A stretch of DNA of 64,000 nt from Octopus sinensis. Taxonomy: Eukaryota. The DNA lies in assembly GCF_006345805.1 (NCBI RefSeq), contig NC_043002.1, forward strand, positions 109,616,001 to 109,680,000, given 5' to 3'. This document shows positions 12,061 to 40,514 of the stretch, piece by piece. Under the pieces are notes generated by a model. It was not told where the DNA came from. It did not search any database and worked only from the letters and a program-made list of their open reading frames with translations. How positions within the stretch are numbered: the first letter of the stretch is position 1; each line of letters opens with the position of its first letter. Both the position numbers and the translations under genes were made by a program.

Positions 12061-12182
12061 CTATTTCGGTTTACGGCAATGTTTCTTGAGTAAAAACACG
12101 CAGATCATTGACCCAATAATAATGGCTGTCAGTGGAACGACGACAGTGATGATGATGATGTTGTTGTTGTTGGAGGTTTCAT
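12061..12182 (-). CDS. CRIM1: Terminal TM exon (DETSNNNN-IIIITVVVPLTAIIIGSMICVFLL-KKHCRKPK*)
   Basis: ccttgtctctttcag acceptor, phase 1; 24 hydrophobic residues followed by a basic stop-transfer segment; VVVP motif as in human CRIM1 TM (VVVPII). Confidence 0.8.
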
Positions 12183-15100
12183 CTGAAAGAGACAAGGAGA
12201 ATGGCTGTTACTGGAACGATGAGAGTGATGAGGATGTTGTTGTTGTAGTTGTTGTTGTTGTTGCCTTTGGAACTGATGGAAGGTTCATCTGAAAATATTC
12301 AAATAAAAATACGCACGTCGTTAATTGAAAGAAGGCAAAGTAAATCAATGCAACGATTTCTTAACGAAGCATCAACCGAATCTGTGTTTGTGGAAAAGGC
12401 ACTGCATGTAGAGTGGAGTATCTTGCTGAAGGTTGTAACTTGGAGAGATTTTCCAATTTGCAACAACTGGGAGAGGTTACACACAGAAGTTACGTGCAGT
12501 GGAGGTTATAGAGATTGGAAATGACATGCAGTAGGGATTACAGGCAGTGGAGGTTACATGCAGTGGAGATTTTAAGCATTGGAGATTAGGCAGTAGAGAT
12601 TACATACAGTAGAGATTCCAACCAGTGGAGGTTACATGCAGTGGAGATTATAAGCATTGGAGATTATAGGCAGTAGAGATTACAGGCAGTGGAGGTTACA
12701 TGCAGTGGAGATTATAAGCATTGGAGATTATAGGCAGTAGAGATTACATACAGTAGAGATTATATGCAGTGGTGATTATAAGCATTGGAGATTACAGGCA
12801 GTGGAGATTACATGCAGTGGAGATTATATGCAGCGTAGGTTACATGCAGTGGAAATTATAAGCATGGAAGGTTATATGCAGTGGAGATTATAAGCATGGA
12901 AGGTTATATCCAGTGGAGATTATAAACATTGGAGATTACAGAGAGTGGAAATTACATGCAATGAAGATTATATGCAGTGGAGATTATATGCAGTAGAGAT
13001 TACATGCTGTGGAGATTATAAGCATGGAAGGTGATATGCAGTGGAGATTATAAGCATTGGAGGTGATATGCAGTGGAGATTATAAGCATTGGAGATTAGA
13101 TGCAGTGGAAATCATATGCAGTGGAGATTACACAGAGTTGGGGTTGAATACGATGGAGGTTACATGCAGGGGAGGTTGAACACAGAAACGCTGAATAAAA
13201 ATTGTTTGAAATTGCAGTTTTAAATGTTTTCACTTCAATCAATTTATCTGTAGTCAAGTCATAGAAATCAGGATGAGCATCACAGCTTTCCACTTCCATC
13301 CCTTAAAATATCAGGACATCATTCTGTTTCAGAAACTCTCAGATCTACCTTTCTGGGTCAAGGAAGACATGAGAAGGGAAATTAGCTTATAGCTGAGGAA
13401 ATAGGGTTTTATTAGCACAAGATATTACAGTGCAGGGGCAGTGTTTGTGGAGTAAAGAATTATTGACCTATCAAACCCAAGACAGCATGAAAGGAAATAT
13501 AACACTGAGTACGAGAATTGCATGAAGCAATAATGGAGCTCCTGTGGCAACCCAACCTGCTTGAAATCATCATCATTGTCGTTTAACGACTGCTTTCCGA
13601 CTGGCAAGCCAGAAGGCTGCACCAGGCTCCAGTTTGATCTGGCAAGGTTTCTACAGCTGGATGCCCTTCCTAACACCAACCACTCCAAGAGTGTAGTGGG
13701 TGCTTTTTATGTACCACCGGCAAGAGGGCCAGTCAGGCGGTACTGGCATTGACCACGCTTGAATGGTGCTTTTTACATGCCACAGGCATGGACGTGTCAC
13801 CGGCACAGAAGTAAAATTTCCCTTAAATCGTATCTTTGCTTCTTAAAAATGGAGGACTCCTGTAATTTAAGATGAGTAGGATGAAATGGTCAAAGCAGAA
13901 ATACCTTTGATCGTGGGTCTACTCAGTTAGGACTGACCTGGGGCTAAACAAATTCAAAACTAGTGGTTTTGAAAGATCTCACCGAAGAGTGGTGCCACTG
14001 CTGCCACCACCGTCGTCATCATCATCATCATCATCATTATCAATGAAACCAAAAATAAAGCGTCCTAAGAAAGCATTTTTGAAATGTTCAATATGAAACA
14101 CGATTGTCAAATGGTTCAAAACTAGAACACTTTCTCAAAGATTTCAAATCAGATCAACTCTGTCTGTTTGTCTTCTTTATCTAATTGTGTATCATTCTTA
14201 TACAAGGCACGGGAGTGGCTGTGTGGTAAGTAGCTTGCTAACCAACCACATGGTTCCGGGTTCAGTCCCACTGCGTGGCATCTTGGGCAAGTGTCTTCTG
14301 CTATAGCCCCGGGCCGACCAATGCCTTGTGAGTGGATTTGGTAGACGGAAATTGAATGAAGCCTGTCGTACATATCTATATATATATATTTATATGTATG
14401 TGTGTGTATATGTTTGTGTGTCTGTGTTTGTCCCCCTAGCATTGCTTGACAACCGATGCTGGTGTGTTTATGTCCCCGTTACTTAGCGGTTCGGCAAAAG
14501 AGACCGATAGAATAAGTACTGGGCTTACAAAAGAATAAGTCCCGGAGTTACTCGATTAAAGGCGGTGCTCCAGCATGGCCGCAGTCAAATGACTGAAACA
14601 AGTAAAAGAGTAAAAGAGTAAGTCTCCCTCATCACCAATACTCATCAATAGATGTCAGATGTATCTTTAAAGACTTCATCTCCAGAGCTTCAGTCCTTAC
14701 ATAACGGTTCTCCATATTTATTTCTCTGGAGATTAATTTAAACATGACCGTTGCCAGCCTTGCCTGGCCTCCGTGCCGGTGGCACGTAAAAAAGCACCAT
14801 CCGATCGTGGCCGTTGCCAGCCTCGCCTGGCCCCCGTGCCGGTGGCACGTAAAAAGCACCATCCGTCCGTGGCCGTTTGCCAGCTCCGTCTGGCACCTGT
14901 GCGGGTGGCATGTAAAAAGCACCCACTACACTCACGGAGTGGTTGGCGCTAGGAAAGGCATCCAGCCGTAGAAACACTGCCAGATCAGACAGGGCCTGAT
15001 GCAGCCTTCTGGCTTCACAGACCCCAGTTGAACCGTTCAACCCATGCTAGCATGGAAAGTGGACGCTAAATGATGATGATGATGATGATGATGATGTCAA

Positions 15101-16912
15101 ACTAGGTAAGATCGCAGCCATCCATCCATACAGGTATCCATCAACACATCCTTTATGGCCACCACCCCCAGCTGAGAGGGCTTTGTCTTGCAGGTGCTAG
15201 TGCTGCATAAAATGCACTCATGCTGGTGCCATATAAACTGCACTTGTGCCAGTTCCACATAAAAGCACCCAGTGCAATCTGTGAAGTGGTTGGCATGAGG
15301 AAGGGCATCCAGCTGTAGAAAGCATGCGAAAACAGACAACTGGAGCCTGGAAAGCTCTCCAGCCTTGCCACCTCCTGGCAAACTGTCTAAATCATGCCAA
15401 CATGGAAAATGGACATTAAACAACAACGACAATGATAATATAGGCGTAGGTGTGTCTGTGTAGTAAGTAGCTTGTTTACCAACCACATGGTTCCGGGTTC
15501 AGTCCTACTGTGTGGCACCTTGGGCAAGTGTCTTCTACTATAGCCTCAGGCTGACCAAAGCCTTGTGAGTGGATTTGGTAGGCGGAAACTGAAAGAAGCC
15601 CGTCGTATATATGTATTTATATTTGTATGTGTGTGTATATGTCTGTCCCGCCAACATTGCTTGACAACTGATGCTGGTGTGTTTATGTTACTGTAACTTA
15701 GTGGTTCAGCAAAAGAGACCGAAAGAATAAGTACTAGGCTTCCAAAGAATAAGTCCTGGGGTCGATTTGCTCGACTAAAGGCACTGCTCCAGCATGGCCA
15801 CAGTCAAATGACTGAAACAAGTAAAAGTGTAAAGAGTATATCATCACCATTTACTGTCTGTTTTCCATGCTGGTATGGGCCGGAGGGAATGGTAGGAGCT
15901 TGTAAGCCTGAGGATGTTAGATAATGGTGATGGCGATGATGACGATGTTGATGGTAGTTGTTCCAGATACCAGTTTGAGAAATATTACTGTTTTATTTTC
16001 GGTCATCAGAAATATCCAAAAATGGGTGAAATGTTGAGTTTTAGTTTGAAACTCTCTTCTCTGCCCCACCCTCAATGTTCATTGCTACCAATTAAGGTGA
16101 GAAGGAGGAGGAATCATATACATACCTGCGCTAACTCCAGCGACATATGATGTTGGTTTTTTATTGACCTTTTCTTTGACGACCTCTGGAGGACCAACTG
16201 TGGTCAGTATGATGGGTATGTCCTTGGATATGATTGACTTGGCTGTTTTCGTTTCATTATCTGGCAAAGAAGAAACAAAGAAGTCAGTCCAGTGTGTGTG
16301 TGCTGATGTCTGTATGTCTTCATGTTGACGCAACTCATGGCAAGATGTCACTATTCCTTGCGATTATGATAAGATTTATGTCTTACAGAAAGAAAATTCT
16401 TATTTCTTTAATGCCCACAACATAGAGGGGACAAACAAAGGTATTAAGTCAATTACATCGACCCCAGTGCGTAACTGGTACTTAATTTATCGACCCTGAA
16501 AGGGTGAAAGGCAAAGTCAACCTCGGTGGAATTTGAATTCAGAACGTAGCGGCAGGCGAAATACCGCTAAGCATTTCGCCCGGCGTGCTAACGTTTCTAC
16601 CAGCTTGCCACCCTATAGAAAGAAAATTCTGATAGCTTGGTGGTTCATGTTAAGTCACTGAATAAAAGGGCTGGGTTTTGAACCTGAAATGACATGGTTG
16701 CAGGGGAAACGTCTTAAACCTCACAGCCATTTTAAAAATGACAACGATGAGTGGCTGGGTGGTAAGTAGCTTGCTAACCAAACACATGGTTCTGGGTTCA
16801 GTCCCACTGCGTGGCATCTTGGGCAAGTGTCTTCTGCTATAGCCCTGGGCCGACCAATGCCTTGTGAGTGGATTTGGTAGACAGAAACTGAAAGAAGCCT
16901 GTCGTATATATG

Positions 16913-16951: not shown

Positions 16952-18456
16952 TTGTGTATCTGTGTTTATCCCCCTAGCATTGCTTGACAACCGATGCTGG
17001 TGTGTTTACGTCCCCGTCACTTAGCAGTTCGGCAAAAGAGACCGATAGAATAAGTGCTAGGCTTACAAAGAATAAGTCCTGGGGTCGATTTGCTCGACTA
17101 AAGGCGGTGCTCCAGCATGGCAGCAGTCAAATGACTGAAACAAGTAAGAGTAAAAGAGAGACGGTAGCCACTGCCACCGCTGCCACCAGCACCAGCACCA
17201 CTACCACCACCACAAATCCCTAAAATGAAAAGGGTTTTTACTTACCCATACAGACTGCACAACACTGTCCTTTACGGAAAGATGCCTGTTGACATTTCAT
17301 GGGTGGACAATTCTGTGAGAAACAGTTGATCCGTCCGTTTCGACACATACAGCTTTGGCAGGGACTCACACGCCATACTTCACCATGTTTGAATGATGTC
17401 TCGCCTCTACAATACTTTAGGTGAGGCTTACTGACTGTTGGTTTGTCTGGGTATTGGTCTGGTGAAGAAATAGACACAGAGTCAAGGATCAATGCAATAA
17501 ATAAGTAACATCATGCATGCATGTACACACACACACACACACTTTCTCAAGCCCTGGGACACCTAAGTCTGGTTCCCCAGTTTCTATGGCCAATATGTGA
17601 CTGAGATCACAAAAATCCCTCTGAATGACAAGATGCTCCACTGTAGGGTTCAAGACCAACGATTTCTGAGGGGAGGGGACAAGTCAATTACACTGACTCC
17701 AGTATGTGACTGGTACTTTATTTCATTGACCCTAAAGGCATGAAAGGCCAAGTAGACTTTGGCAGGATTTGAACCAAGAATGTAGAGAGCTGCAAGAAAT
17801 GCTGCTTAGCATTTTGTCTTTGTTTGTAAGTATGTGTGTAAAAAGCACCCAGTCCACTCTGTAAAGTGGTTGGTATTAGGAAGGGCATCAAGCTGTAGAT
17901 ACCATGTCAAAACAGACAATTGGGACATGGTGCAGCTCTACAGCCTTGCCAGCTCCCGTCAAAATGTCCAAACCATGCCAACATGGAAAATGGACATTAA
18001 ATGACACTGCTGCTGGTGTATGTAACAAGTAAAAGCATGGAGGTATTGGGCATTACAATAAGTCCCACTGAAGCAATGTTCCCTTCCAGATGTCCTGTTA
18101 GCCAGTTTTTGCATCAACACTGGCTAATTATTTACATTTGACAGATATTTGTCCTCATCTTGTTTGTTGCTAACACAACATTTCGGCTGATATACCCTCC
18201 AGCCTTCATCAGGTGTCTTGGGGAAATTTTGAACCTGGGTTCTCTTTCCTAAGGTATTTTTTCGATGTTGTTGTTCTTCTTCTTATTACTATTACTATTA
18301 TTGTTATTGTTCAGGTCACTGCTTGGAATCAAACTCGGAATCCTGGGGTTAGTTACCCGCGCTCTTAATCGCTACACCATATGCCTGTGGGCAATTAGGG
18401 AGTGAATTTTAGGGCTTATAAATCTAATATTTTCCTATCCTTCTTTACTCATAATA

Positions 18457-18535
<79 letters not shown>

Positions 18536-20663
18536 TTGAAGAAATACCTTAGGAATGAGAACCCAAGTTCGAAATTCCTCCAAGACACCTGAAGAAGGCT
18601 GGAGGGTATATCAGCCGAAACGCTGTATTATTATTATTGTTATTCTTCAGCATATGGGAACTGGTATTAAGGAAGGATAGAAAATATTATATTTATAAGC
18701 CCTAAAATTCACTCCATAATTGCCCACTGGCATATGGCATAGTGGTTAAGAGCGCAGGCTACTAACCCCAAGATTCCGAGTTTGATTCCAAGCAGTGACC
18801 TGAACAATAACAATAATAATAATTATTATAACATCGAAAAATACTTTAGGAATGAGAACCCAGGTTCGAAATTTCCCCAAGACACCTGAAGAAGGCTGGA
18901 GGGTACATCAGCTGAAATGTTGTGTTAACAATAAACACGATGACAAATATCCGTCGAATGTAAATAATGTAAATAAAACAAATAGCAGTTGTGTACTGGT
19001 ACTTATTTATTGATCCCAATAGAAAAAGCAGGCAAATCTCTCTAAAGAACATATTAGGTAATGTAGTCTCGGATACACAATGTCTTGACAAAATGATAGT
19101 TGGAAAATCTGTTTTGATTACTCTATGTCGAACAGGACTGACCAAGGGTCAAACCACAACTGCAAAGTTAATATGAATTGATGAAAGAACTGAACTTACT
19201 TGGACAAAGTGGACAACACTGATCCGATTGCTGTATTGGATAATGACATAACTGTGGTGGACACTTCTCTGTCGTACACAATATGATACCATAATGACAT
19301 ATGCAGCTGGTGCACTTGCCCAACTGCCACACCTCACCTTCAACATAATCATTACCATTGTTACCATGACATGTCCGTTGTTGAGTGGAGCCCTTAGATG
19401 GGAGAGTGTCAGTACCTGCAGGGAAATACAGAGACAAGGATTTAATAAATTGATGTTGAAGGGAGTCAGAAAATGTTTAAGGAAAGAAAGAAAGACACCT
19501 GAGCATTGTATACAAGAATTTCATTATTATTAAGAGCCTTGTTTAGTCAAGTTGATCAGGCATCTACAGTTGTATGGATAAGCCTGGGCAAGGTGTTATG
19601 AGAAGGATTGGTAGTTGATTATCGTTAACGAGTCTTTCCTCTCTCCACCTTTGATATTATCCACAAAAAAAAAATAAAATGACGGCTGCCTTTAGGGTCA
19701 CTACAACTTGGTACCCATGTTGTCACAAACAACGAGAACAAGTACTTCAAGACATTCTCTTTGATATTCTACTGTCATCATCGCCGCCACCTCCGCTGCT
19801 GCCTCCACTACCACCGCTGCCGCCACCACCACCACTTAACATCTGTTTTCCATGCTGGCATGGGTTGGATGCTTTCACAGGAAGTGGCAAGGTTGGAGAG
19901 CTGTAACAAGCTCCATTTGTCTGTTTTGGCATAATTTCTACAGCTGGATGCCCTTCCTAGTGCCAACCACTTTACAGAAGTGGATTGGGTGCTTTTTTAT
20001 GTTGGCACCAGAACCAGTGCTTTATTTTGTGGCACCGGTATGAATGCTTTTTATGTAGCACCAATATAATTCCACTAATGTTCTGCTTCAGATTGGAATC
20101 ATTTTTTTCCCTTGACCCAGGAAAGGTGAAAGGCAGAACTAAATTTGGCAACATTTGAATTCAGAGCACAGACAGTCATGAAAACACCATAAGGTATTCC
20201 CAAGCCAACATTCTAACAATTCTTCTAGTTCACTGCCATTTATGGTATATTGCGTAAAAGACTTAATGATAGAAGTTGGCCGTGGTGAAGGTAGAAAACC
20301 AAGGAAGAATTGGTAAGAAATAGCGATATCAGGTCTAAGAATGTTGGAGCCTTGCAAATCTATTATCAGGAAAAACAAGGTTAAGACGGGAGAGATAGTG
20401 TTAGGTAACATGGAATAGCCATTATGATGGTGCTGCTGCTGATGGTGGTGGTGGTGGTGGTGATGATGACGAAGATGGTGGTGGTGGTGGTGGTGGTGAT
20501 GCTGATGTTGAAGATGAAAATTTGTGAAATAGCAAACATACACAGCTTTTTCAAAAGTTCTCTATCAAAATACTACAGTTTAATTGTTGTCTGTGTTTGA
20601 GTTACAACAGAATGACTTTGTTGTAGTTTGTAGTATGGCATGTGGTCTGTTGAAATTAGACTA

Positions 20664-20709
<46 letters not shown>

Positions 20710-23700
20710 GAGAAAGAGGGAGAAAGAAAGAGATATGGAAAAGTTTGCCAGAGTAGTTTTTGCATCTGACGCAACCAGTTTGACATTGTCTCAATTCTTA
20801 CAATGGAAGCGTTGTGTCTGAGAGACTGTTGGCTGCTTTGCTGGGTAAATGGTAAATAATAATGAGCAAGATTAAGCAGCGCACGTGCACACACTACAAT
20901 CGTATATACACAGATAAAATATGCTTAGATACATATAGTACAAACACTATACACACTTTTACATCCCTCATCATCATCATCCTCATTTAACATCCATTTT
21001 CCATGCTGGTATGGGTTGGACGGTTTAACCAGAGATGGCCAGCTGGTTGTTGTTTGGGTCAATTACAAAACATTTAGAGTGTTCTGGGTGTTTTTTGTGC
21101 TAACAACATTGTTGGGGGTTGCCTTATAGTTTACAAAGGGAAAGAGAGAAACCTACAATGTTAAGGAACAAAAGAGGAAAAAAAGTTTTATGAGAGGATA
21201 GTCTTTCACCACCACCACCACCACCACCACCCTGCCACCACCACCATCATCATCACTTAATGTCTGTTTTCCATGCTGGTGTGGAGGTGCATGGCTTAGT
21301 GGTCAGGGGTGTTGGACTCGTGATCTTAAGGTTGTGTTTTCAATTCCTGGACCAGGCAACGTGTTTCTGTTTATGAGTAAAACCCTTCATTCCACATTGC
21401 GCAGTCCACTCAGCTGGCAAAACTGAGGAATCCTGAAATGGACCATGCTTCCATTCAGAGGGGAATATATACACCACAGAAACTGGCTCTAATGAGTTGG
21501 CAAGGAGCTTTCTATGTTTATATGGGTTAAATGATTTGATCAGATCAAGTGAGCTACAGAGCTGCGTTGTGCTCCAGTGTCTGCTTTGACATGGTTTCTG
21601 TGGCTGGAGGCCCTTTCTAATGTTTATTGTTTCAACTGGGGTCTGGGAAGCCAGAAGGCTGCACCAGGCCCAGTCTGATCTGGCAATGTTTCTATGGCTG
21701 GATGCCCTTCCTAACGCCAACCACTCCGTACCCACTACACTCGCGGAGTGGTTGGTGTTAGGAAGGGCATCCAGCCATAGAAACACTGCCAGATAAGACT
21801 GGGCCTGATGCAGCCTTCTGGCTTCACAGACCCCAGTTGAACCGTCCAACCCATGCTAGCATGGAAAGCGGACGCTAAATGATGATGATGATTGTTTTAT
21901 ATAATATATGGATGAGGACAGCTGTGTAAAGAAGTGCCAAGCTCTAATTGTGGAGGGAACTTGTGGAAGGCATTGACCAGGGAAGACATGGGAAAGAAGT
22001 GGTGAGAAAGGATCTTCAGATGCTGGGCCCCATTGAGGAAATGACAAAGGGCTGGGAGCTGTTGCAATTTGCTGTACTTGAGAAGAGATGTCAAGCCAAG
22101 TAAAATCACTGTTGTCCATACATACAGGCTCCACTCTGCAGGTGCTGGTGTTAAATAAAATGCATTTGTGCCGATGCTGCATTAACACACCTGTGACGGT
22201 GGCATGTAAAAAGCACCCAACATACTCTGTAAAGTGGTTGGCATTAGGAAAAGCATCCAGCTGTAGAAACCATGCCATAACAGACAGTTTGGATAATTCT
22301 CTGGTTCTCTGGACAGCCTCCTGGCTGTCTTGACAACCCTTGGTTCTCCAGACAGCCCCCTGGCTCTCTGGACAGCTTCCTGGCTCTCTGGACAGCCTCC
22401 TGGCTCTTTGGACAGCTCCCTAGTTCTTTGGACAGCTCTCTCGCTCTCCGGACAGCCTCCAGGCTCTCTGGACAGCTTCCTGGCTCTCTGGACAGCCTCC
22501 TGGCTCTTTGGACAGCTCCCTGGTTCTTTGGACAGCTCTCTCGCTCTCCGGACAGCCTCCTGGCTCCCTGGCCAGCTCCAGTCAAACTGTCTAACCCATA
22601 GTAAATGGATGGATGATGATGATGATGACAATGATGATGAATATATTACTTGTTTCAGTCATTAGATGTGGCCATGCTGGGGCACCACCTTGAAAGATTT
22701 TAGTCTAACAAATTGACCCCAGTAGTTTTTTTTCATTAAAGTCTGGCACTTATTCTGTCAGTCTCTTTTTGCTGAGCTGTTAAGTTACATGGACATAACC
22801 ACACCAACATCTGTTGTGAAGCAGAGGTGAGAGACAAACACAAGCACACACACAGTCATGGCACAACAAAGAATCTCTGGGCTTTGCCTTCCGCAAAGGT
22901 GTTATTTACCTGCGCATGATGGGCAGCAGTCTCCAGGTCGAAATATTGGATTGTGACACTTTGGAATGTTACAGGTAATTAATGAGCAAAGTTCTTGTCC
23001 TTCCCTACAGTAGCACTCACGGCAACCATCATACCACATGTCGCCATCTTTGTAATGTATTCCATTGGACATGCAGCTGCTCGGTAACCATAGCGATGAT
23101 GATGTTGGGATCTGAGGGGTTGACGACTTTCTGTTATATGGCTCATCTGAAAGAACAAATAAAAATTCCTTGAAATATTTATGTCATTAAGGTTTGACTA
23201 ATTGGGGGTGGGGCATGGGTGGGTGAGGCTAATATTAAATGTCTTTTTCTTTTATAAGCCATTTAAGAAACACACAAAATCCATTAGATTCACTTCAACA
23301 TTTAAATTAGATTTGTCAAAATATTTTCATCGCTTTGAGACACTGTTTTTGTGTTTCTTAAATGGCTTATAAACACCCCCCACGCTGCAATTGTTTTCGT
23401 TCCAGCACATGATCCCAGATCAGGTCACTTGCTATGCAAGTACATCTCCATAAATCTTTTTCTTTTATCTTTTCTTTTACTTGTTTCAGTCATTTCACTG
23501 CGGCCATGCTGGAGCACCACTTTTTAGTCAAGCAAATCGACCCCAGGACTTATTCTTTGTAAGCCTAGTACTATAAGTCTTCTTTTGCTGAACCGCTAAG
23601 TTATGACAACAGATGCTTATAAACAACATATCTCAGATTCACAGAGTCAGTATTTACTTTCTATTTTCAGTGCTTGGTAAGTGAAGTGTGTAGAGTGTGG

Positions 23701-26700
23701 ACATTGCATGTATCTGGCGAGTGGCATTTGCGGGACCTAACTTTTGGAAAGAGGGAAAAAGTTGCAAGGAGCAAGGCCTGGACAGGTGCATCATTGTGGT
23801 GGACTTGCCACTCACCGGACACATGTGATGATCACACACTTCCAAGCACTTTTTTATATACAATGGAAGTGAGCAAGAGCGTTAGAATTTAGTATGCCTG
23901 TGCGACAGGGTTCAAGATCAATGTGTGCCACGCAGCTTCACTCTGAGTACTTTATTTCGGTTACCATAGTAAAAGTCCTGATACTTTTGATCAGACCTCA
24001 TAAACACACAAACATATACACATGCATACATACACACATCACAAAGATAACATTTATTTCTTTATTAACCACAGAGGGCTAAACATAGAGGGGAGAAACA
24101 AGGACAGACAAAGGGATTAAGTCGATTAGAGTGACCCCAGTGCATAACTGGTACTTATTTAATAGACCCTGAAAGGATGAAAGGCAAAGTTGACCTTGAT
24201 GGAATTTGAACTCAGAACGCAACGGCAGACGAAATACTGCTAAGCATTTCGCCCGGCGTGCTAACATTTCTGCCAGCTCGCTGCTTTAAATATTTATTTC
24301 TTTATTGCCCACAGGGGGCTAAACATAGAAGGAACAAGCAAGGACAAAAGGATTAAGTCAATTACACTCTAGTGCGTAACTGGTACTTATTTAATAGACC
24401 CTGAAAGGATGAAAGGCAAAGTTGACCTTGGCAGAATTTGAACTCAGAACGCAATGGCAGATGAAATACCGTTAAGAATTTTGCCCGGCGTTTTAACGAT
24501 TCTGCAAGCTCACTGCCCTATCCTGTCTGAAATATTACAAAGGATAATATTAAATGTGTTGACAACATATTCTTAGCAACAACGTATCTCAAGAGAGTAT
24601 TTACTTTCCGCTTACCTACACACATACACAACTTGCAGCCCCTGCGGTTGGTTATAAAGCCGAAAGGACAACGCTTGTTGCAATGGATGTATGGACACGT
24701 GTGACATTTGCAACGAAGACAACCATTTCTGGTGCGCTTGTAGCCGAACTTACAGCGGCGCTTACATGAAGTGATGGCAGGACATTTAGAGGGAGCTGCG
24801 GCACATTTACAGGTCTGGCGGTTCTTTTCATCCACTTCGTAACCATATTTACAGGAAATGGAACAATTGTCTGAGAATGAAGAGAGATATTAATTAAATA
24901 TAATAATTATAGCATAGATGATATAGTAACAAGATAATGAGTGCTAAAATATATGAAATGAATGAAAGGATGACAGATGGGGAAGGACAATAAGGGAAAT
25001 CAGTTTCTTTGTAAGATGTTACAATAGGTTAAATTGAACTGGTATTACTGGTACTTCTGACTCCAGCTCTGATAAATAATTTGAATCAGAAAACAGAAGA
25101 ACAAGATGTAATTCTACATGGTGCAATGGGTAAATTGTCACTGCTTTATATTTTTAATTTTGTGCATTGTTTGTTTTTGATTTTGTTGACTACACAGTAT
25201 AGTAGGGTCAGTTGGGCACCGTCTGTGAGAAAAACACCAACATGACGCAATTGACTCTGCCAGAAATTTGGAAACGACGTGCTGTACTGCTTGCTTGACA
25301 TTTGCGCTGGAAGCTCTAATACAAACAGATCGTGAACACACAGAACAACCGTTGGCTTGCCGTGTCCCCAAAACATGTACTGAGAGTGATAGAAATCAAA
25401 CATCCAGTCAACATCATAGCATTTGGAGTGATCACTAGTGATGGTGACGTTATGCTTCCAATCACTTTCCCCACAAGGCCTCAGACTCAACACAGAGGCC
25501 TACATCAAGTGCCTGGAGAAGGTAGTGCTGTTCTGGGTCAAGAGGGTGGCTGCTGGAAGACCCTATGTCTGGCAACGGGACTCTGCACCATACCACACAA
25601 GCAGAAGAACCCAGTCATGTCTGTCAGACAATTTCTGCAACCACATCTTCCGTAACATTTGGCCACCTAACTCCCCTGACTGCAGCCCCCTTGATTATTA
25701 TATGTGAGGCATGGTTGAGCGAGAGACCAACAAAACCCCTTGTAACACCAAAGATGAACTGAAGGCAAGGATTACGGCAGCATTCACCAACTTAAACAAG
25801 GAGACTGTCCAGAAGAGTTACAGGAGATCCTGAAGTCGTCTGGAGGCTGTGGTTGAAGCCAATGGTGATTTTACTGAATAAATTTACTCTTTAGTATTTC
25901 AAGATATTTTTATGTAATTTTGGTGAATATATCTGTTAAAACAAGCTTCTTTTATTCTTTTAATTGTTTCAGTCATTTGACTGTCACCATGCTGGAGCAC
26001 TGCCTTTAGTCGAACAAATTGACCCCAGGACTTATTCTTTGTAAGCCGAGTACTTATTCTATTGGTCTCTTTCACCAAACCGCTAAGTTACAGGAATGTA
26101 AACACACCAACATTGGTTGTCAAGCGATGGTGGTGGTGGGGAGACAAACACTGACACAAACATATACATAAAAATATAAATATATGTCGGGCTTCTTTCA
26201 GTTTCCGTGAACCAAATCCACTCACAAGGCTTTGGTTGACCTGATTCTATAGTAGAAGACACTTGTCCAAGGTGCCATGCAGTTGAACTGAACCTGGAAC
26301 CATGTGGTTGGTAAGCAAGCTACTTACCACACAGCCACAGATGTCAGTGTTATTTTCATTTTTGCGAAATTTAGATGACAGTTTGTTCATCACACTCTGA
26401 ATATATTTGTGAGATGAGGAATCTGTATCATGGACACTGTTTCTATTAGTTACACTGGTGCCCTTCCCATCTTGATTGTGGCTTTCACTATGTTTCAGCT
26501 GTTGTATGATCCAATCTTCTCCAGACATGGCACCAAGGTTAATTCACACAAGAATCAATTGAAGCAAGAAATATCATGAAACACAGAGACTGGAATGAGA
26601 ACAGTAAAACCCGGTGGATCAAATAAAGGGTTAAGTTTGATTGGCTGGATGTGTAATGTCAGTGTGCACACACGACAGAGTGTAAGCGCCCTGAGAGAAA

Positions 26701-29700
26701 TGTTGGACATGAGAAGCATCAGATGTGGCGTGCAAGAGAGACATTTGCGTTTGTATGGTCATGTACAGCGGATGGATGAGGAGAGATGTGTGAAGAAGTG
26801 CCACTCCCAAACAGTGGAAGGAATCCGGGGTAGAAAGAGACCCAGGAAGACATGGATGACCTTCGAACGTTGGGCCTCACAGAGGCAATGATGAAAGACC
26901 GAGACCTCTGGAGATATGCTGTGACTGGGAAGACCCAGCAAATAAAGTGAGTTCACAGCTCTAACCTACACCAGTGTCGCATAAACAGCCCACTCAAAAG
27001 GTTACTTGGATCGTAGGGCGATATGCTGTGCTTGAGGAGACCTATTGAGTCAAGTACATCATAATCAAAAGGAAATGGAAATTGTAGTTGTGATTCCCGT
27101 GCCGGTGGCATGTATAAAGCACCAACCGAGCGTGGCCGATGCCAGTGCCGCCTTGACTGGCTTCCGTGCTAGTGGCATGTAAAAAGCACCGTCCGTTTGT
27201 GGTCGATGCCAGCCTCCTCTGGCCCCTGCTGCTGCTGCTGATGACGATGATGAAGTTGATATTGATGATGACGATGATCGTGGTGATGATGATGCTGATG
27301 TTGATGATGATGATGATATTGATGATGATAGTTTAGTTGATGACGATGCTGTTGATGCTGCTGAAGTTGATGATGATGGTGATGGTAATGGTAATATAGC
27401 CCTCATATCACCCAAATAACACAAACTTTATTTATAGTGTAAGGCTTGATCAGAAGAAGAAGAAGAAGAAGAAGAAGAAGACCAGCGACAGAAGGAAGAC
27501 AGGGATCTTCTGACTGGAAACGGGGTGAAAATGCTTGCAACAACAAACTGGACTCCATTAAAGTTACTCAACAATTATGCGTGTGTGTGTGTGTGTGTGT
27601 GTGTGTTAAATAAAGTTACAGATTGAATTTACCTGGCTTTCACACAGTTTTTACCAAATTTGCTCAAAAAGGCATCAATAACCTAAAGAACCAGTCAAGT
27701 AATTGGCTGATGTAATTAATTAATTAACCCTACACACCAGCTGGCTTTGTTTCTGAATTAGAAACAATTATCAGAAAGAGCTGTTCTTCACTCCTGCTCC
27801 AGAGCGTCGGCTGCGGGGTCATTCTGAAAAGCTCTATCTGCGACGATTTCATCTCAATCGAAGGAGAGGAGCTTTCTCTGTCTGGGTTGCGGATCCGTGG
27901 AATAAGCTGCCAGATGAGATGGTGAAGATGCAGACGACTGCTCGGTTCAAAGTCTCCCTTGACCTCAAGTGGCCTGAACTCTTTACATGAACACCACCCT
28001 GTACATAACTCTATGTCCCCCTACATGGCCTTGCTTTTTGCCTTTTGAGCCAAAAAATTAACTAACTCACTAACTAACTTATAATTATAATTATAATTAT
28101 AAGGCGGTGAGCTGGCAGAAATGTTACCACACCAGGCCAAATGTTTAGCAGTATTTTGTCTGTCCGTACTTTCTGAGATCAAATGCCACCAAAGTTGACT
28201 TTGCCTTTCATCCTTTTGGGGTCGATAAATTAAATACCAGTTGTGGGTTGATCTACTCGACTGACCCCCTCCCCCAAAAAGTTTCAGACCTTGTGCTTAG
28301 AGAAGAAAAGAAATAACCCCACACACAAGCTATCTTTGTTTCTAAATTAGAAACAATTGGCATTATAATTTCAGACCTTGTGCCTTTAGTAGAAAGAATT
28401 ATTGCCTCTGCCATCGCAAAAGTGGAGGTATTGTTTTCAGTTGCGTTTGTTTGTTTGTTTGTCTGTGGACAAGATATCTCAAGAACTGCTGGATGGATTC
28501 AGATGAAACTTTCAGGGATGTTTGGCCTTGTGACTGACACAAACTGATTCGATTTTGGGATTGATCCGGTACTGAACAAAGATTCTGGTTTATTTTACCG
28601 TTTTTTTTTTTACTTAATTTTTGAGAGTGATCAGGTTCATTTTTAGTATTCTCATTTGTGAGAGCAGTCGAGCTTCTTTCAGATATTCTCATTTTAAAAA
28701 TCATCTCCAGGATGTTGATGTTGCTTTGGCGGAGTTTTGTGCTCTCTGAGTGCTCTTGTTGTTGTTGTTGTTGCTGCTGCTCTTCTTCTCCTCCTCCTTC
28801 TTCTTAATAAGGTGGTGGTGACGTGGCAGAATTGTTAGCATGCTGAGTTCAAATCCCACTGAGATCAACTTTGCTTTACATCCTTTCAAGGTTGATAAAA
28901 TAAATACCAGTTGAACACCAGGGGTTGATGTAATCTACTTACCTCCTCCTCCTCCTCCTCTGAACTTGCTGGCCTTGTGCCAAAATTTGAAATCATTATT
29001 ATTATTATTTATTGTTTTTGCACAACTTCTAACGCTGGAGATGTACTACGGTGCCAGCTGTTCACTATGAGTGAACGAAGGTAACACCTCTTATTTTTTG
29101 AGAACCTTCCAGAGTATTTGAGTGGTTCCAAGTAGTGTTTTTTTTTTTCTGCAAGGGCTCTACCCTTATTGCAGCCCCTATTTGTTCCATGTACTTCTCA
29201 AAAAAAAAAAAAAAAAAAAAAAAACTTGAAAATCCCACCCAAATTATTATTATTATTATTAAGGTAACGGGCTGACAGAACCATTAGCATGCTGGCAACA
29301 AGCTTAGGCAGCATTTCATCCATTGATTTTATATTCTGAGTTTAAATGCTGCAGGGTTTGGACTTTGCCTTTCATCCTTTTGGGGTTGATAAAATAAGTA
29401 CCAGTTGAGTACTGGGGTTGATATAATCAACTTACTCTCTCCCCTGAAGTTGCTGGCCTTGTGCCAAAATTTGAAATCATCATCATCAATGACAATGATG
29501 ATGATGATGACGACGATGATGATTTTTAATAATAAGGTTGCAAAATTTGGGAGGAGGAAGTTCAGTCACTGATATTGAACTCAGCATAAGACTGGTTGTT
29601 TATTTGACCAACTCTTGAAGGAAGAAAGGCAAAATGGACCTTAATGTGGTTTGAACTCAGAATATAGAGTTAGAAAAAAATACCACAACAAGGTATTTTG

Positions 29701-29726
29701 TTCAACACTCTGCTGATAGCAATAGC

Positions 29727-29823
<97 letters not shown>

Positions 29824-32800
29824 GGATAATAACGATAGATAATAGCAACTAAATCAGGGTTTTAATAAAGAAAAGGAAAAACAAAAACAAAAAGAGAAAC
29901 AAACAACAAATACTTTGCAGGTAGGAAGAATGACAATAATGAGAACTTACTCTCACAGACTGGACAGCACTGTCCTGGGACACTTCGGGCATTCGGACAG
30001 CGAACGGAACACATTTCTGTCTGACATTCAACAACACCATTATTACATCGACATGACAAACAACCTTCTTCTTTCCATGTCTCAGAATTCTTGTAAAGTC
30101 TGTCACCATTCATACAACCTTCGGTGAGGAATAATTAAATAATTACATGTCAAATTAGAATTATTAATTTATTACTGACTATAGCCTTAATTTATTACAG
30201 TCCCATGGCGGTAAATTACTGAAGGAATGTTACTTATTTTATTGACCCCAGGATGCTGAAAGTCACAGTCATTGAGATTTGAACTTGGGATACAAAATAA
30301 GCTAATCAAATAAAAATCCTTTCTATTATAAGCACAAGGCCTGGATTTTGTGGAGATGGGGATTGTTGATTACATCGACCTCAGTGATCCACTGGTACTT
30401 AATTTATCAATTCCAAAAGGATGAAGGGCAAAGTCGACCTCAGCGGAACTTAAACTCAGAACACAGCAATGAGCGAATACTGCTAAGCATTACGTCCAGT
30501 GTGCTAAAAAGTCTGCCAGCTTGCTGTCTTAATCTAATTGAATAATACCATCATCTGTCTTAGACACAAAGGGAAGGGAAACAGTCAGATGTATCAACCC
30601 TAGTACATGTCATGGCACTTCGTTGGTTACGATGACGAGGGTCCCAGTTGATCTGATCAACAGGGTAGCCTGCTCGTGAAATTAACGTGCAAGTGGCTGA
30701 GCACTCCACAGATATGTGTACCCTTAACGTAGTTCTCGGGGAGATTCAGCGTGACACAGAGTGCAATAAGGTTGGCCCTTTGAAATACAGGTACAACATA
30801 AACAGGAAGAAAGAGTGAGAGAATGTTGTGGTAAAAAAGTACAGCAGGGTTCACCACCACCCCTGCCATAGCCTCGTGGAGCTTTAGGTGTTTTCATTCA
30901 ATAAACACTCACAATACCCGGTCTGGGAATCGAAACCGCGATCCTACGACTGAGTCTGCTATCCTAACTACTGGGCCATTATGTCTCCACAGTACAGGTA
31001 AAGTGAAGAATCTTCCCAGTCATATAGAATCATGATGCTGGTCTCCTGGGTTCTATGGTGTCCCCACCTGGATGGAACACTGGTCTGTTGCAGGAATACT
31101 CAGTTTTACCAGCTGAGTTGGCTGGAGCAATGTGAAATGAAGTGTTTTGCTCAAGAACATAACGGGTCGCCCTGTACAGGAATTGAAACCACAATCTTAC
31201 GATCTCGAGTCCAACACCCTAACCATTAAGCCATGCACCTACACCCTAATACATGACTGGTGCTTTATTTTATCGACCCTGAAAGGAAGAAAGGCTAAGT
31301 TGATGTAACCAGGATTTGAGCTCAAAACACAAAGAGTGTAAAAAAAGGATTTAAAAAATATTTCTGGGACCTAAATGATGCTAAAAATAGCAGTAATTTC
31401 CCTCAGATTGTACCCTAAGAGGAAAGATACATTGGATAATGTAGACTCAGATAATCAAAGCTTTATTTCCCTAAAGTCTTATTTTTTTTTCCTGAATATA
31501 ATCTGGAGAAATTGATTGCATCAAATATATCCCTGTGTCTTTTATGCCATCAACTATGGTAACTAAATACTTCCAGGAATTTAATCCATTTCTCCAATGT
31601 TACAGATAAAGGCATTTCCTCTGCTACTCTATTGCGCAGCAGACAAAAGATCTTTAGCTGCATTAGGAAACAGCAGCCAAATCTCCCTCAAATCACACCA
31701 TTCTTTTGAAAAAATAAGACATACAGAACAGTGTAGTCTTTGATATACAAAAAGGCAAGAGGGTCATGGTTAGATTACTTTTGATTATGGCTGATCTGCT
31801 GAACTTCTATGTGGTCCTTTAACCTGCCAAAACTAGAATGTAAACCTCCTACAAATTACACCCTGTATTTGATCTTCTGCTTGTTTCAGTCTGTAGCCAT
31901 GTTTGGGCAACCCCTCGAAGGGTTTTAGCTGAATGGATTGACCATCAGAACTAATATTTTCTGAAGTCTGGTGGTACTTATGGTATTGGTCTTTTCTTTT
32001 TTTAAAATCAAACTGCTAAGTTATGGGGACATAAAAAAAACTAATACTGGTCATCAAACACTGGTAGGGGTCAAACACAACACACACACATGATTACATG
32101 ATGAGCTTCCACCTAGTTTCTAACAACCAAATTTATTCACAAGGCATTGGCGACACTTGCTCAAGGTGCCATATAGCGGGACTGAACTCGAAACCATTAG
32201 GTTGCAAAGCAAGCTTCTTAAGCACACAGCCATGCCAGTACCTATCATTTAATATATATTAAGCAAAGACAGCCATAGCTGGAGAGGCTAGCTCTGAGTG
32301 ATAAGTTATACATACCTTTGCAGACAGGACAGCACTGTCCTTGCGGGACGGTCATCCAACCACACTGGAGGGGCTTACACTTCTCCTTCTGACAAGAGAT
32401 TAGACCATTGTTACAGCTGCACTTGGTGCAGTTGTCATGCTTCCATTCAGCAAGATGTTGGTAGATTCTTCCATCAGAAAAACAAATGTTCCCTAAAGAA
32501 GGAAAGAAGTGGGGGCGGGGGAGTGGGTGAGAGAAGAAGAAAGAGAACAAAAAATGTATAAATACAAACAAAAAAACATTGCAAAAATATATTTTATTGT
32601 TTGTGGGAGAGGTACAGCTTTCACTTTCTTTTGAATATACATCAAAGCTTTGGTATGTTTATGTGTGTGAGTGTGTATATGCACCTGCCTATATGTGTGT
32701 GTGTATATACATGTGTCTGTGAGTGTATTTGAATGAGTGCAGGTGTGTAAACACCCAGTTTTCTACACAAAGTCATGTAAACACACAAACCTCTACATGT

Positions 32801-34213
32801 ATTACAATAATTAACTTGCTCCAGATAAACACAGATGTGCTGGTGCCACATGTAGAGCCCCCATGCTGGCACCATGTGACACCAGCACCTGCGCTGGTGT
32901 CACATAAAAAGCACCCAGTCCACTGTGTAAAGTGGTTGGCATTAGGAAGGGTATCCAGCTGTGGAAACTATGACATAACAGACAATTGAAGTCTGATGCA
33001 GCTCTCTGGATGGCCAGCTATTGTCAGACTCATGCCAGCATGGGAAACGGATGTTAAATGATGATGGTGATGATGATGATATATACACACAAATGCATAC
33101 CGTAAATCCTCGAGTATAGTCCGCCCTTGAGTATAACACGCCGGGGATTTTTAGGGGGCTGTACCTCTGAAAAACCTAAACCTTGTGTATAATACGCACC
33201 CCTTCTCTAACTTGAGTCAAGGAGGTCTATATAACGTCCTTGGTTTGTAAAAATGTATATGGTAATGTCCTTTATTATTATTGTATATATAACACAATGC
33301 AAACGTGTAGCTTTTTTGTGCATTTTGTTTGCAGAAAATAAAGAAATAACAGTAATAACGTTTAATAAATGTTGCTTACTGCAAGTTATGGATGATTCTT
33401 TTATGACTTCATTGCTTTCAGGCTTAGCTTAAGGTATTTTCACCCCCGACATCACAAAATGCGTCTGAATAAACATTGCCAGACAGCAAATAGAGACTCG
33501 GACATTGTTTAGAAAATAATTTTCATTTTTAACCTCGTATATAGTACGCACTAGGGATTTTGAACTTTAAATTTTGGGGAAAAAATGCAGATTATACTCG
33601 AGGATTTACAGTACTTGTATTTTACACACATTATCAGATCAGGTCTCCTGCCCCTAAATAATTCACTATTTTGATACCTGGCTTTCTATGGCTCCTTGCG
33701 TAATGTAACCATTAGTTAGAATAGACAGGCAGAAGTGAGGGCGCTTTTCTCTCGGAAGACCAGAAAATATCATGAGTTATGGCCTTTCTCCTGTGACAAC
33801 CACCACCAAAACACACACACACACAAAAGTGCAACACCTGGAATGCCTCAACTTACCATTACAAACTGGACAACATTCCCCAACAGGAATCGTTACCCAT
33901 TTACACTGCAAGCTTCTGCATGTCTGCCGCTGGCAATACGTCAGGCCATTCTTGCAGCTGCATTTGGTGCAGTTGTCCAGTTTCCACACATCTCCATGTT
34001 GGTAGGACTGACCACGAGAAAAACAGCTGTTCTCTGTCACAACACGAAAACAGAAGAGGGTTAGAAGGGGGTTAAAGAAGGAGTTAGGGGAGAGTTCAGA
34101 AGGACTGGGGGGGAGGCACCTAAACACATGTGGGTGTGGGTGTACTACTACAACAGACCATGTATACTATCACACACAAACACATACACCACCTCTGACT
34201 GCTGCTGCTGCTG

Positions 34214-34247
<34 letters not shown>

Positions 34248-34269
34248 AACTTCTACTACCACCACCACG

Positions 34270-34316
<47 letters not shown>

Positions 34317-36422: not shown

Positions 36423-36456
<34 letters not shown>

Positions 36457-38698: not shown

Positions 38699-38729
<31 letters not shown>

Positions 38730-40467: not shown

Positions 40468-40498
<31 letters not shown>

Positions 40499-40514
40499 AA
40501 TTATTAATTATTAT

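What the first reader, a model, noticed from the sequence alone, without database searches (positions are those of the whole stretch)
12061..12288. Duplicated last exon: two acceptors predict a TM versus a GPI-anchor-like CRIM1
Seen: on the minus strand the start of the TM exon occurs twice, 106 bp apart, each behind a pyrimidine tract plus CAG in phase 1. Distal copy (12182): DETSNNNN-IIIITVVVPLTAIIIGSMICVFLL-KKHCRKPK*. Proximal copy (12288): DEPSISSKG-NNNNNYNNN-ILITLIVPVTAILLVSFR*. Because 106 is not a multiple of 3, the proximal frame stops at a TGA just after the second acceptor. Known: GPI signals are a small omega residue, a small omega+2, a polar spacer of roughly 7-10 residues and a terminal hydrophobic tail with no cytosolic domain. 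S-K-G, 9 polar residues and about 17 hydrophobic residues fit this layout. Vertebrate CRIM1 is a type-I TM BMP/VEGF-binding protein. Inference: alternative 3' splice-site choice could switch this BMP regulator between TM and GPI-anchored or releasable forms, with an (AAC)n-encoded spacer.
Basis: partly seen in the sequence, partly recalled or inferred. Interest (0 to 1): 0.8.

Follow-up and report, generated by a model that had tools for sequence, protein, structure and literature searches.

The report
Octopod CRIM1 duplicated anchor-exon start
In an octopus-like CRIM1 gene the start of the last (membrane-anchor) exon is duplicated together with its splice acceptor. One gene could therefore make either a normal transmembrane protein or a tail-less form with a lipid-anchor-like (GPI-like) end; a second octopod has the tail-less ending, but whether both forms are made is untested.

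Summary
On the minus strand two AG acceptors lie 106 nt apart, with exon starts at 12288 and 12182. Each opens a copy of the start of the last coding exon of a CRIM1 orthologue (6 VWC and antistasin domains; best hits are mollusc and vertebrate CRIM1). The copies are a real, diverged partial tandem duplication: 106-nt and 79-nt units, a 59-nt ungapped core 83% identical (52-nt best local alignment 87%), and a 27-nt in-frame indel.

- **Distal acceptor:** gives a 24-residue transmembrane (TM) segment plus KKHCRKPK.
- **Proximal acceptor:** gives a polar S/K/G/N spacer and a 17-residue hydrophobic end, ...VSFR*. Its last codons and stop are the distal acceptor itself (TCT TTC AG|A TGA).

New evidence: the Argonauta hians CRIM1 model ends ...NNKNNIISIAVPLTAIVIVSFR*. 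The proximal-type reading frame is therefore kept in another octopod family and used in an annotation. A squid-like transcript has a TM segment plus a 7-residue tail, like the distal form. Cephalopod CRIM1 lacks the long cytoplasmic tail of other animals.

Both proximal-type C-termini fit the published layout of a GPI signal. No spliced reads, GPI predictor or biochemistry could be obtained. If true, this is a new member of the known class of TM/GPI isoform switches. Interest is moderate.

The parts
16126..16260 (-). Penultimate coding exon (juxtamembrane stalk, ...KKPTSYVAGVSA). The phase-1 donor GCAG|GTATGT ends the exon at 16126.
   Evidence: 71% identical to Argonauta P0002 residues 974-1001
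12289..16125 (-). Last intron as defined by the proximal acceptor. It contains a 16-nt minisatellite at 12495-13130.
12291..12325 (-). Native intronic context of the proximal acceptor: branch-point-like TTAAC (A at 12321) and a U-rich tract (14/20 pyrimidines).
12289..12290 (-). Proximal 3' splice-site AG
12189..12294 (-). Tandem duplication unit 1 (106 nt): TTTCAG plus the proximal copy of the exon start
12179..12288 (-). Coding sequence used if the proximal acceptor is chosen: (D)EPSISSKGNNNNNYNNNILITLIVPVTAILLVSFR plus TGA at 12181-12179
12235..12263 (-). (AAC)5 TAC (AAC)3 tract encoding the poly-Asn spacer of the proximal form
12185..12212 (-). Branch-point-like GTAAC (A at 12208) and pyrimidine tract (17/20) of the distal acceptor. 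Both are made of the hydrophobic-tail codons of the proximal copy (dual use).
12183..12184 (-). Distal 3' splice-site AG. It lies inside the Arg codon AGA (12184-12182) of the proximal frame.
12110..12188 (-). Tandem duplication unit 2 (about 79 nt): TTTCAG plus the start of the distal exon
12061..12182 (-). Coding sequence used if the distal acceptor is chosen: (D)ETSNNNN, the 24-residue TM IIIITVVVPLTAIIIGSMICVFLL, then KKHCRKPK and TAG at 12063-12061
   Evidence: same layout as squid-like transcript P0009
11952..11984 (-). (GUU)n tract in the 3'UTR, complementary to the exonic (AAC)n tracts. Its relevance to splicing or editing is speculative.
17246..45064 (-). Upstream CRIM1 exons in the window: 45064-44798, 34993-34888, 34749-34625, 34033-33857, 32492-32316, 30118-29951, 24870-24616, 23146-22910, 19415-19200, 17458-17246. 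All except two are phase 1 to phase 1 (the 34993 exon ends in phase 2 and the 34749 exon starts in phase 2). They encode 6 VWC domains and antistasin repeats.

Best explanation
**What it is.** This is the 3' end of an octopod CRIM1 gene, a membrane-tethered BMP regulator. An old partial tandem duplication copied the last 6 or more intron bases (TTTCAG) and about 73 nt of the start of the last coding exon.

**How it works.**
- The unit was 79 nt, not a multiple of 3. A transcript spliced to the upstream (proximal) acceptor therefore reads copy 1 in the normal frame and then runs out of frame into copy 2. It stops at once at TGA, inside ..TTTCAG|ATGA...
- The proximal acceptor keeps the native intronic branch point and U-tract.
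- The distal acceptor is served by a branch point and pyrimidine tract made from the hydrophobic codons of copy 1.
- I propose that both acceptors are used. The distal one gives the ancestral cephalopod form: a 24-residue TM segment plus an 8-residue basic tail. The proximal one gives a form ending in a polar spacer and a 17-residue hydrophobic stretch with no cytosolic tail. This is most likely removed and replaced by a GPI anchor (omega about S in S-K-G).

**Shown:** the duplication, the frames and stops, the acceptor context, the gene identity, and retention of the proximal-type frame in Argonauta.

**Inferred:** use of both sites, and GPI attachment. I put use of both sites at about 0.5, and about 0.3 for both sites used with the proximal product GPI-anchored.
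For: - **Sequence and frames:**
- **Duplication is significant:**
- **Acceptor quality:** both acceptors fall within the range of the gene's other acceptors, and each has a branch-point-like motif at -26 or -33.
- **Gene identity:** CRIM1.
- **Argonauta hians model:** CRIM1 model GAB1609489.1 ends DKTSTSSNNKNNIISIAVPLTAIVIVSFR*. It aligns better to the proximal copy (score 75) than to the distal copy (47), and shares the xSxSS motif that the distal copy lacks. Its identity to the proximal exon is about 55% by my own count on that alignment. The 28-residue matched part of the neighbouring coding exon J is 71% identical.
- **How the Argonauta models were built:** ab initio, RNA-seq and Octopus protein evidence. 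The Argonauta/Octopus split is calibrated at 29 Ma or more.
- **The distal copy looks alive:** it keeps an uninterrupted 24-residue TM segment plus a basic tail and a stop, the same layout as transcript-derived P0009 (23-residue TM plus 7 residues).
- **Substitution pattern:** in the 14-codon hydrophobic core the copies differ at 8 sites, 6 at codon position 1, none at position 2 and 2 at position 3. All exchanges are I/L/V.
- **GPI layout:** met in both species by the rules in 10.1101/838680.
- **No nonsense-mediated decay expected:** both stops lie in the last exon (inference).
Against: - No transcript evidence for either junction in this species.
- The Argonauta model may rest on homology or ab initio prediction rather than RNA.
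- The presence of the distal copy in Argonauta is unknown, because its DNA was not retrievable.
- The absence of position-2 changes is weak statistics: about 0.04 at best.
- Hydrophobic codons stay hydrophobic easily, and S-F-R-stop may be conserved only because it is the distal acceptor.
- No trained GPI predictor was run. With the S-K-G triad the hydrophobic run starts at omega+12, on the long side.
- A 17-residue hydrophobic end plus Arg could instead act as a short TM anchor.
Confidence: 0.5

Rival explanations
1. The proximal acceptor is used, but its product is not GPI-anchored. It would be a type-I protein with a short (17-residue) TM segment and a single-residue tail. That would change its trafficking (for example retention in the early secretory pathway), its stability or its shedding.
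For: The hydrophobic run is 17 residues followed by Arg. With the S-K-G triad the run starts at omega+12, later than the typical omega+10 or so. Cephalopod CRIM1 already works with almost no cytosolic tail. The difference between the two forms may therefore be mainly TM length.
Against: Both octopod proximal-type ends place a small-residue triad (S-K-G, S-T-S) 9-12 residues before the hydrophobic run, after a polar linker. This is the published GPI-signal layout.
Confidence: 0.25
2. In octopods the proximal acceptor has become the only one used, and the distal copy is a decaying relic inside the 3'UTR. There is then one isoform (tail-less) and no switch.
For: The proximal acceptor keeps the native intron context and comes first on the transcript. 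The only octopod gene model seen uses the proximal-type end.
Against: The distal frame is still open for 40 codons. It has a clean 24-residue TM segment, a basic tail and a stop at the same place as in the squid-like orthologue. The distal acceptor has the better pyrimidine tract (17/20) and a UAAC branch point at -26.
Confidence: 0.15
3. The proximal copy is an unused intronic remnant of a neutral duplication. Only the distal acceptor is used, and the Argonauta model is a mis-annotation.
For: The proximal pyrimidine tract is at the low end for this gene (14/20). The Argonauta models partly rest on ab initio and homology evidence.
Against: A neutral intronic remnant should not keep, over 29 Myr or more, an open frame of 29-36 codons, a polar spacer plus hydrophobic run, and an identical ...VSFR* end in two octopod families. 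None of the 8 differences between the copies falls at codon position 2.
Confidence: 0.1
4. Assembly artefact: two haplotypes or a mis-join placed in tandem.
For: None specific. Tandem false duplications do occur in heterozygous invertebrate assemblies.
Against: The copies are about 17% diverged and differ by a 27-nt indel. An independent assembly of another genus encodes the proximal-type end.
Confidence: 0.01

Closest known systems
[quoted passage not shown]
   Same: It is the same family. The window encodes six VWC domains and antistasin repeats, and the cephalopod orthologues carry an IGFBP-like N-terminal motif. The best database hits are annotated CRIM1. The distal form has a type-I single-pass anchor.
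   Different: Vertebrate CRIM1 has a 76-residue cytoplasmic domain (PMC11922885). Other molluscs have 60-100 residue tails with an (R/K)PKSTNL motif. The cephalopod gene stops 7-8 residues after the TM segment, and the window holds no exon for that motif. The window has a 3+3 VWC arrangement with two tandem-duplicated VWC exons. A full-text search for CRIM1 together with GPI listed no paper whose title or abstract describes a GPI-type CRIM1 isoform.
CD58 (LFA-3): GPI-anchored and transmembrane isoforms
   Same: One gene gives a type-I form with a hydrophobic TM segment and a very short (12-residue) cytoplasmic segment, and a GPI-anchored form without a cytoplasmic domain. The two sit in different membrane domains (PMC8218816). 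This matches the proposed pair here: a TM segment plus 8 residues, versus a tail-less hydrophobic end.
   Different: The CD58 isoforms are demonstrated biochemically; here nothing is. From my own knowledge the CD58 forms differ by alternative splicing at the 3' end. I did not verify that here, and I know of no acceptor duplication there.
NCAM1 isoforms (NCAM-120/125 GPI versus NCAM-140/180 TM)
   Same: Alternative processing of one gene yields GPI-linked or transmembrane forms with different cell biology (PMC2290859).
   Different: From my own knowledge, NCAM uses separate alternative terminal exons and poly(A) sites. Here two competing acceptors lie 106 nt apart within one terminal exon region, and the stop of one form is created by the frame shift at the duplication junction.
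Alternative 3' splice sites, and tandem exon duplication giving mutually exclusive exons
   Same: Two AGs compete for the same donor, and they arose by tandem duplication of exon sequence.
   Different: The spacing of 106 nt is not NAGNAG-type. The duplicates are not whole exons and cannot be mutually exclusive exons, because there is no donor between them. Copy 1 serves both as coding sequence and as branch point and pyrimidine tract for copy 2.

Membership tests
CRIM1 | Multiple VWC (chordin-like cysteine-rich) repeats | tested here: met
   Pfam VWC, 6 stretches, E=1e-45, on the conceptual translation of the window exons
CRIM1 | Antistasin-like repeats between the VWC groups | tested here: met
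   Pfam Antistasin, 2 stretches, 32.7 bits against a cut-off of 21.2. Vertebrates have four.
CRIM1 | N-terminal IGFBP motif | tested here: inconclusive
   The first exons lie outside the window; tblastn covers P0002 residues 370-1036 only. The orthologues P0002 and P0009 hit PF00219 at E=6e-6 and 1e-4, just under the curated cut-off.
CRIM1 | Closest relatives are annotated CRIM1, not KCP or BMPER | tested here: met
   The top 60 or so hits are CRIM1 from molluscs and vertebrates (431-220 bits). KCP and BMPER score 182 bits or less. Argonauta CRIM1-like is 74% identical in the antistasin exon.
CRIM1 | Single TM segment followed by a cytoplasmic domain of about 76 residues | tested here: not met
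   The TM segment is present in the distal form (24 residues), but the tail is only 8 residues. No exon for the conserved tail motif was found in the window. The squid-like transcript has 7 residues, so this is a cephalopod-wide departure.
GPI-anchored protein (C-terminal attachment signal) | Small omega residue with G/A/S at omega+2 | tested here: met
   S-K-G in the window's proximal form and S-T-S in Argonauta. Rule taken from 10.1101/838680. This is a rule-based check only.
GPI-anchored protein (C-terminal attachment signal) | Polar spacer, then a hydrophobic stretch from about omega+10 to the C-terminus, with no cytosolic domain | tested here: met
   Window: 9-residue spacer NNNNNYNNN, then 17 hydrophobic residues plus R. 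Argonauta: 6-residue spacer SNNKNN, then 16 hydrophobic residues plus R.
GPI-anchored protein (C-terminal attachment signal) | N-terminal signal peptide | not tested
   The N-terminus is outside the window.
GPI-anchored protein (C-terminal attachment signal) | Positive call by a trained predictor (NetGPI, PredGPI, big-PI) | not testable with these tools
GPI-anchored protein (C-terminal attachment signal) | PI-PLC release and dependence on GPI transamidase | not testable with these tools
   Requires experiment.
Alternative 3' splice-site pair | Two AGs, each with a pyrimidine tract and a branch-point-like motif, compatible with the same donor phase | tested here: met
Alternative 3' splice-site pair | Spliced transcripts using each site | not testable with these tools
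   No cephalopod transcripts of this lineage were reachable. The only indirect evidence is the Argonauta gene model with the proximal-type end.

The most novel reading that the evidence does not exclude
Octopods have kept, for tens of millions of years, a duplication-born pair of acceptors. It toggles the BMP regulator CRIM1 between a transmembrane form and a GPI-anchored, releasable form. The choice between them, or recoding of the poly-Asn spacer, would be controlled by a 28-bp exon-to-3'UTR (AAC)n·(GUU)n RNA duplex. That duplex loops out the distal acceptor and would be a natural ADAR substrate in these heavily RNA-editing animals.
Probability: 0.12. Interest if true: 0.65.

Novelty: new member of a known kind. 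Interest (0 to 1): 0.42.

Why it matters
CRIM1 tethers BMP-family and other growth factors at or inside the producing cell, so how it is anchored decides where it acts. A GPI or tail-less form could sit in other membrane domains, or be released to act on neighbouring cells. The case also shows cleanly how a small out-of-frame tandem duplication can create a new protein C-terminus and a new splice site in one step. Hydrophobic TM codons, which are T-rich, served at once as the pyrimidine tract and branch point for the second acceptor. Finally, it records that cephalopod CRIM1 has lost the conserved cytoplasmic domain. The catenin- and cadherin-linked functions reported for that domain in vertebrates (my own knowledge, not checked here) therefore cannot apply in cephalopods.

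Tried and rejected
- **Homologue searches with C-termini.** The window's distal C-terminal 156 aa and the squid-like C-terminal 141 aa both returned nothing. The third search, with the 562-aa conceptual protein, returned CRIM1 from many animals but no cephalopod. That index therefore could not supply octopus isoforms.
- A single-exon query was used instead.
- **Argonauta DNA.** Not delivered, because the gene spans 154 kb.
- **Squid-like genomic contig L003.** It ends before the last three exons.
- **Metagenome scans.** A degenerate pattern for the junction and a scan for relatives of the C-terminal alignment both found nothing.
- **A further downstream coding exon for a long cytoplasmic tail.** No match to the conserved (R/K)PKSTNL motif in any frame. 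The squid-like transcripts also stop right after the TM segment. Rejected.
- **Proximal copy as an internal cassette exon, spliced from a donor inside it to the distal acceptor.** The only GT candidate (CCA|GTAACA) is weak and would leave an intron of about 30 nt. Rejected by inspection.
- **Canonical di-lysine (KKXX) retrieval signal in KKHCRKPK.** Position -4 is R and position -5 is C, so this is not claimed.
- **Assembly artefact.** Rejected because of the divergence, the indel and the Argonauta data.
Full report
**Observation**

- The penultimate coding exon (16260-16126) ends GCAG|GTATGT in phase 1.
- Two AG dinucleotides follow, at 12290-12289 and at 12184-12183. Each is preceded by ..TTTCAG and followed by ATGAA.
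- Spliced to 12288, the frame reads D-EPSISSKGNNNNNYNNNILITLIVPVTAILLVSFR and stops at TGA 12181-12179.
- Spliced to 12182, it reads D-ETSNNNNIIIITVVVPLTAIIIGSMICVFLLKKHCRKPK and stops at TAG 12063-12061.
- The last three codons and the stop of the proximal frame, TCT TTC AG|A TGA, are the distal acceptor itself.

**The similarity is a real partial tandem duplication**
- The repeat finder gives a 59-nt ungapped pair at 83% identity with 79-nt spacing. The exon starts are 106 nt apart. The 27-nt difference is an in-frame insertion in the proximal copy: ATC AGT TCC AAA GGC plus extra AAC units.
- The local alignment score is 34.5, against about 8 ± 1.2 (maximum 14) for shuffled sequences.
- The units are 12294-12189 and 12188 to about 12110. 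At least six intron bases and roughly the first two thirds of the exon were copied.
- The original unit (79 nt) is not a multiple of three, so the frame shift and the immediate TGA existed from the moment of duplication (inference).
- The copies are about 17% diverged and differ by an indel. That excludes a haplotype or assembly artefact.

**Gene identity**
- The minus strand carries a series of cysteine-rich exons, nearly all phase 1 to phase 1.
- Their joined translation has six VWC domains and two antistasin stretches in Pfam.
- In the large protein database its best hits are annotated CRIM1 from molluscs (Solemya 45%, Gigantopelta, Haliotis, Lottia) and vertebrates. KCP and BMPER score far lower.
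- An exhaustive HMMER scan with the antistasin exon found P0002 at 74% identity. This is GAB1609489.1, 'cysteine-rich motor neuron 1 protein-like isoform X3 [Argonauta hians]'.
- The same scan found P0009 and P0151, two 1156-aa ORFs on RNA-derived Logan contigs of a more distant, squid-like cephalopod.
- tblastn shows that the window holds the part matching P0002 residues 370-1036. The IGFBP-motif exon lies upstream of the window. P0002 and P0009 carry that motif at E=6e-6 and 1e-4.
- The window therefore comes from a coleoid close to, but not identical with, Argonauta. It is most likely an incirrate octopod.

**What relatives say about the two ends**
- The squid-like transcripts end ...DTSYIIVIAILVIIICGVFGVLCLLLFNKYRNQA*. 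That is a 23-residue TM segment and 7 further residues, followed by 3'UTR. This matches the layout of the distal form (24 + 8).
- The TM exon is thus the last coding exon in cephalopods, and the distal form is the ancestral one.
- All non-cephalopod CRIM1 sequences inspected have 60-100 residue cytoplasmic tails, many with an (R/K)PKSTNL motif. Human CRIM1 has 76 residues (PMC11922885). The window holds no match to that motif. Cephalopod CRIM1 has lost the cytoplasmic domain.
- The Argonauta model ends ...KKPTSYSGFIDK-DKTSTSSNNKNNIISIAVPLTAIVIVSFR*. This is a polar S/T/N/K stretch, a 16-residue hydrophobic run, one Arg and a stop. It is the proximal-type end, down to the same four last residues.
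- It aligns better with the proximal copy (BLOSUM62 score 75) than with the distal copy (47). It shares the xSxSS motif that the distal copy lacks.
- Identity between the window's proximal exon and the Argonauta end is about 55% (my own count on the alignment). The 28-residue stretch of juxtamembrane exon J that tblastn matched is 71% identical.
- The Argonauta models were built with GINGER from ab initio, RNA-seq and homology evidence (Octopus vulgaris and O. bimaculoides proteins). The Argonauta/Octopus split carries a fossil minimum of about 29 Ma (PMC12682272).
- The duplication therefore predates that split. The proximal reading frame has stayed open and kept its character. At least one annotation pipeline chose the proximal acceptor.

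**Are both acceptors plausible?**
- Pyrimidine content at -23..-4 is 14/20 (proximal) and 17/20 (distal). The other ten acceptors of this gene have 14-19.
- Branch-point-like motifs: TTAAC, with its A 33 nt before the proximal exon start, and GTAAC, with its A 26 nt before the distal exon start.
- In a tandem duplication the upstream copy keeps the native intron. The proximal site is therefore the original acceptor in its original context.
- The distal site kept only TTTCAG. It must take its branch point and pyrimidine tract from the P-V-T-A-I-L-L-V-S-F codons of copy 1.
- Hydrophobic codons have T at position 2 and so make a ready pyrimidine tract. The last 14 nt of copy 1 (ATTCTCCTTGTCTC) have 12 pyrimidines, against 9 in the homologous stretch of copy 2 (ATTATTATTGGGTC). 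This is compatible with later tuning of the distal acceptor (inference).
- In the 14-codon hydrophobic core the copies differ at eight sites: six at codon position 1, none at position 2 and two at position 3. All are I/L/V exchanges. This is weak (about 0.04 at best) but consistent evidence that hydrophobicity was preserved in both copies.
- Both stops are in the last exon, so neither mRNA should be a target of nonsense-mediated decay (inference).

**Is the proximal end a GPI signal?**
- The published layout is a polar linker, a small omega residue, G/A/S at omega+2, a moderately polar spacer to omega+9 or beyond, and a hydrophobic stretch from about omega+10 to the C-terminus (10.1101/838680).
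- A simple rule check finds one candidate in each octopod. In the window it is S-K-G, with spacer NNNNNYNNN, the hydrophobic run starting at omega+12, and 17 hydrophobic residues plus R. In Argonauta it is S-T-S, with spacer SNNKNN, the run starting at omega+9, and 16 hydrophobic residues plus R.
- In the distal form the only triad that passes the same rule (G-V-S) is followed by a 24-residue TM segment and an 8-residue basic tail. It therefore lacks the defining feature of a tail-less hydrophobic C-terminus.
- The layout test is met, but it is only a rule check. No trained predictor or experiment was available.
- A short TM anchor with a one-residue tail remains a serious alternative.

**Verdict**
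- The most likely reading (about 0.5) is a conserved pair of alternative 3' splice sites, born from a duplication, that gives octopod CRIM1 two membrane anchors.
- About 0.3 overall that the proximal product is actually GPI-anchored.
- Rivals, with my confidence in each:
  - The proximal site is used but its product is not GPI-anchored: 0.25.
  - The proximal site is the only one used and the distal copy is a relic: 0.15.
  - The proximal copy is unused: 0.1.
  - Assembly artefact: about 0.01.
- One gene giving both a GPI-anchored and a transmembrane form is a known kind of system: CD58, with a 12-residue tail in its TM form (PMC8218816), and NCAM (PMC2290859).
- A full-text search for CRIM1 together with GPI listed no paper whose title or abstract describes a GPI-type CRIM1 isoform. 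No paper in the library mentions CRIM1 together with octopus.
- I therefore rate it a new member of a known kind, of moderate interest, with an instructive origin.

**Limits**
- No cephalopod proteins appeared in the word-indexed homologue search.
- The Argonauta gene is too long for DNA retrieval.
- The JGI metagenome scans were empty.
- The decisive data are junction reads and the orthologous DNA of other octopods. They exist publicly but were out of reach here.

Noticed in passing
window 11952-11984 versus 12235-12263 (and 12159-12172): The exonic (AAC)n tract of the proximal copy and a (GUU)n tract 77-109 nt after the distal stop form a 28-nt, 96% complementary inverted repeat, 255 nt apart. 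The RNA fold of 11940-12300(-) pairs them in a long helix that encloses the distal acceptor and the distal coding sequence (MFE -106 kcal/mol against -88.5 ± 5 for shuffles, z = -3.5). Only two such tracts of this orientation occur in the 64 kb. This could influence acceptor choice or be an ADAR substrate (AAC to GAC, AGC or GGC would recode Asn to Asp, Ser or Gly)..
   Followed up: partly
window 12495-13130 (and 11567-11628): A 16-nt minisatellite of about 40 copies (TGCAGTGGAGATTATA on the + strand) sits in the last intron, roughly 200-840 nt upstream of the proximal acceptor. On the mRNA strand this part of the intron (12525-13168) carries 8 UGCAUG hexamers, 7 of them inside the array, against about 0.3 expected from the window-wide density. 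Four more lie in a TG-rich repeat in the 3'UTR. UGCAUG is the Rbfox-type splicing-regulator motif (my own knowledge)..
   Followed up: partly
window 34033-33857 and 32492-32316; 30118-29951: Two adjacent VWC exons of equal length (177 nt) look like paralogues. Both match the same VWC of Argonauta and of the squid-like protein at about 56-72% identity. The squid-like transcript P0009 has only one VWC at that position. The Argonauta model lacks the third VWC exon (30118-29951), which is present in the window and in P0009. Exon duplication, and perhaps exon skipping, recur in this gene..
   Followed up: partly
window 12061-12084; proteins P0009, P0152-P0162: Cephalopod CRIM1 ends 7-8 residues after the TM segment. 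Gastropod, bivalve, nemertean, crinoid and vertebrate CRIM1 have long cytoplasmic tails, many with an (R/K)PKSTNL motif. The cytoplasmic domain appears to have been lost in cephalopods..
   Followed up: partly
window 23146-23175 versus 12288-12315: The acceptor of the fourth-VWC exon and the proximal acceptor share ATTTTTATTTG..TTTCAG|ATGA(G/A)CC, and both exons start by encoding D-E-P. This may be chance in AT-rich intron ends or a trace of older exon shuffling..
   Followed up: no
locus L003 (ENA ERZ21867824, contig ctg112452l): A 136-kb contig filed under a metagenome assembly is cephalopod host DNA. It carries CRIM1 exons 81-85% identical to the squid-like transcript P0009..
   Followed up: partly
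window, many places (e.g. 8440-8571 and 7907-8038; 47087-47563; 14152-14478): Repeated interspersed elements translate to recurring peptides (PRADQSLVGGFGRRKLKEARRIY......IHSQGIGRPGAIAEDTCPRCHAVGL...). Abundant TA, TG and CA microsatellites fill the introns. These look like SINE-like repeats typical of a repeat-rich genome..
   Followed up: no
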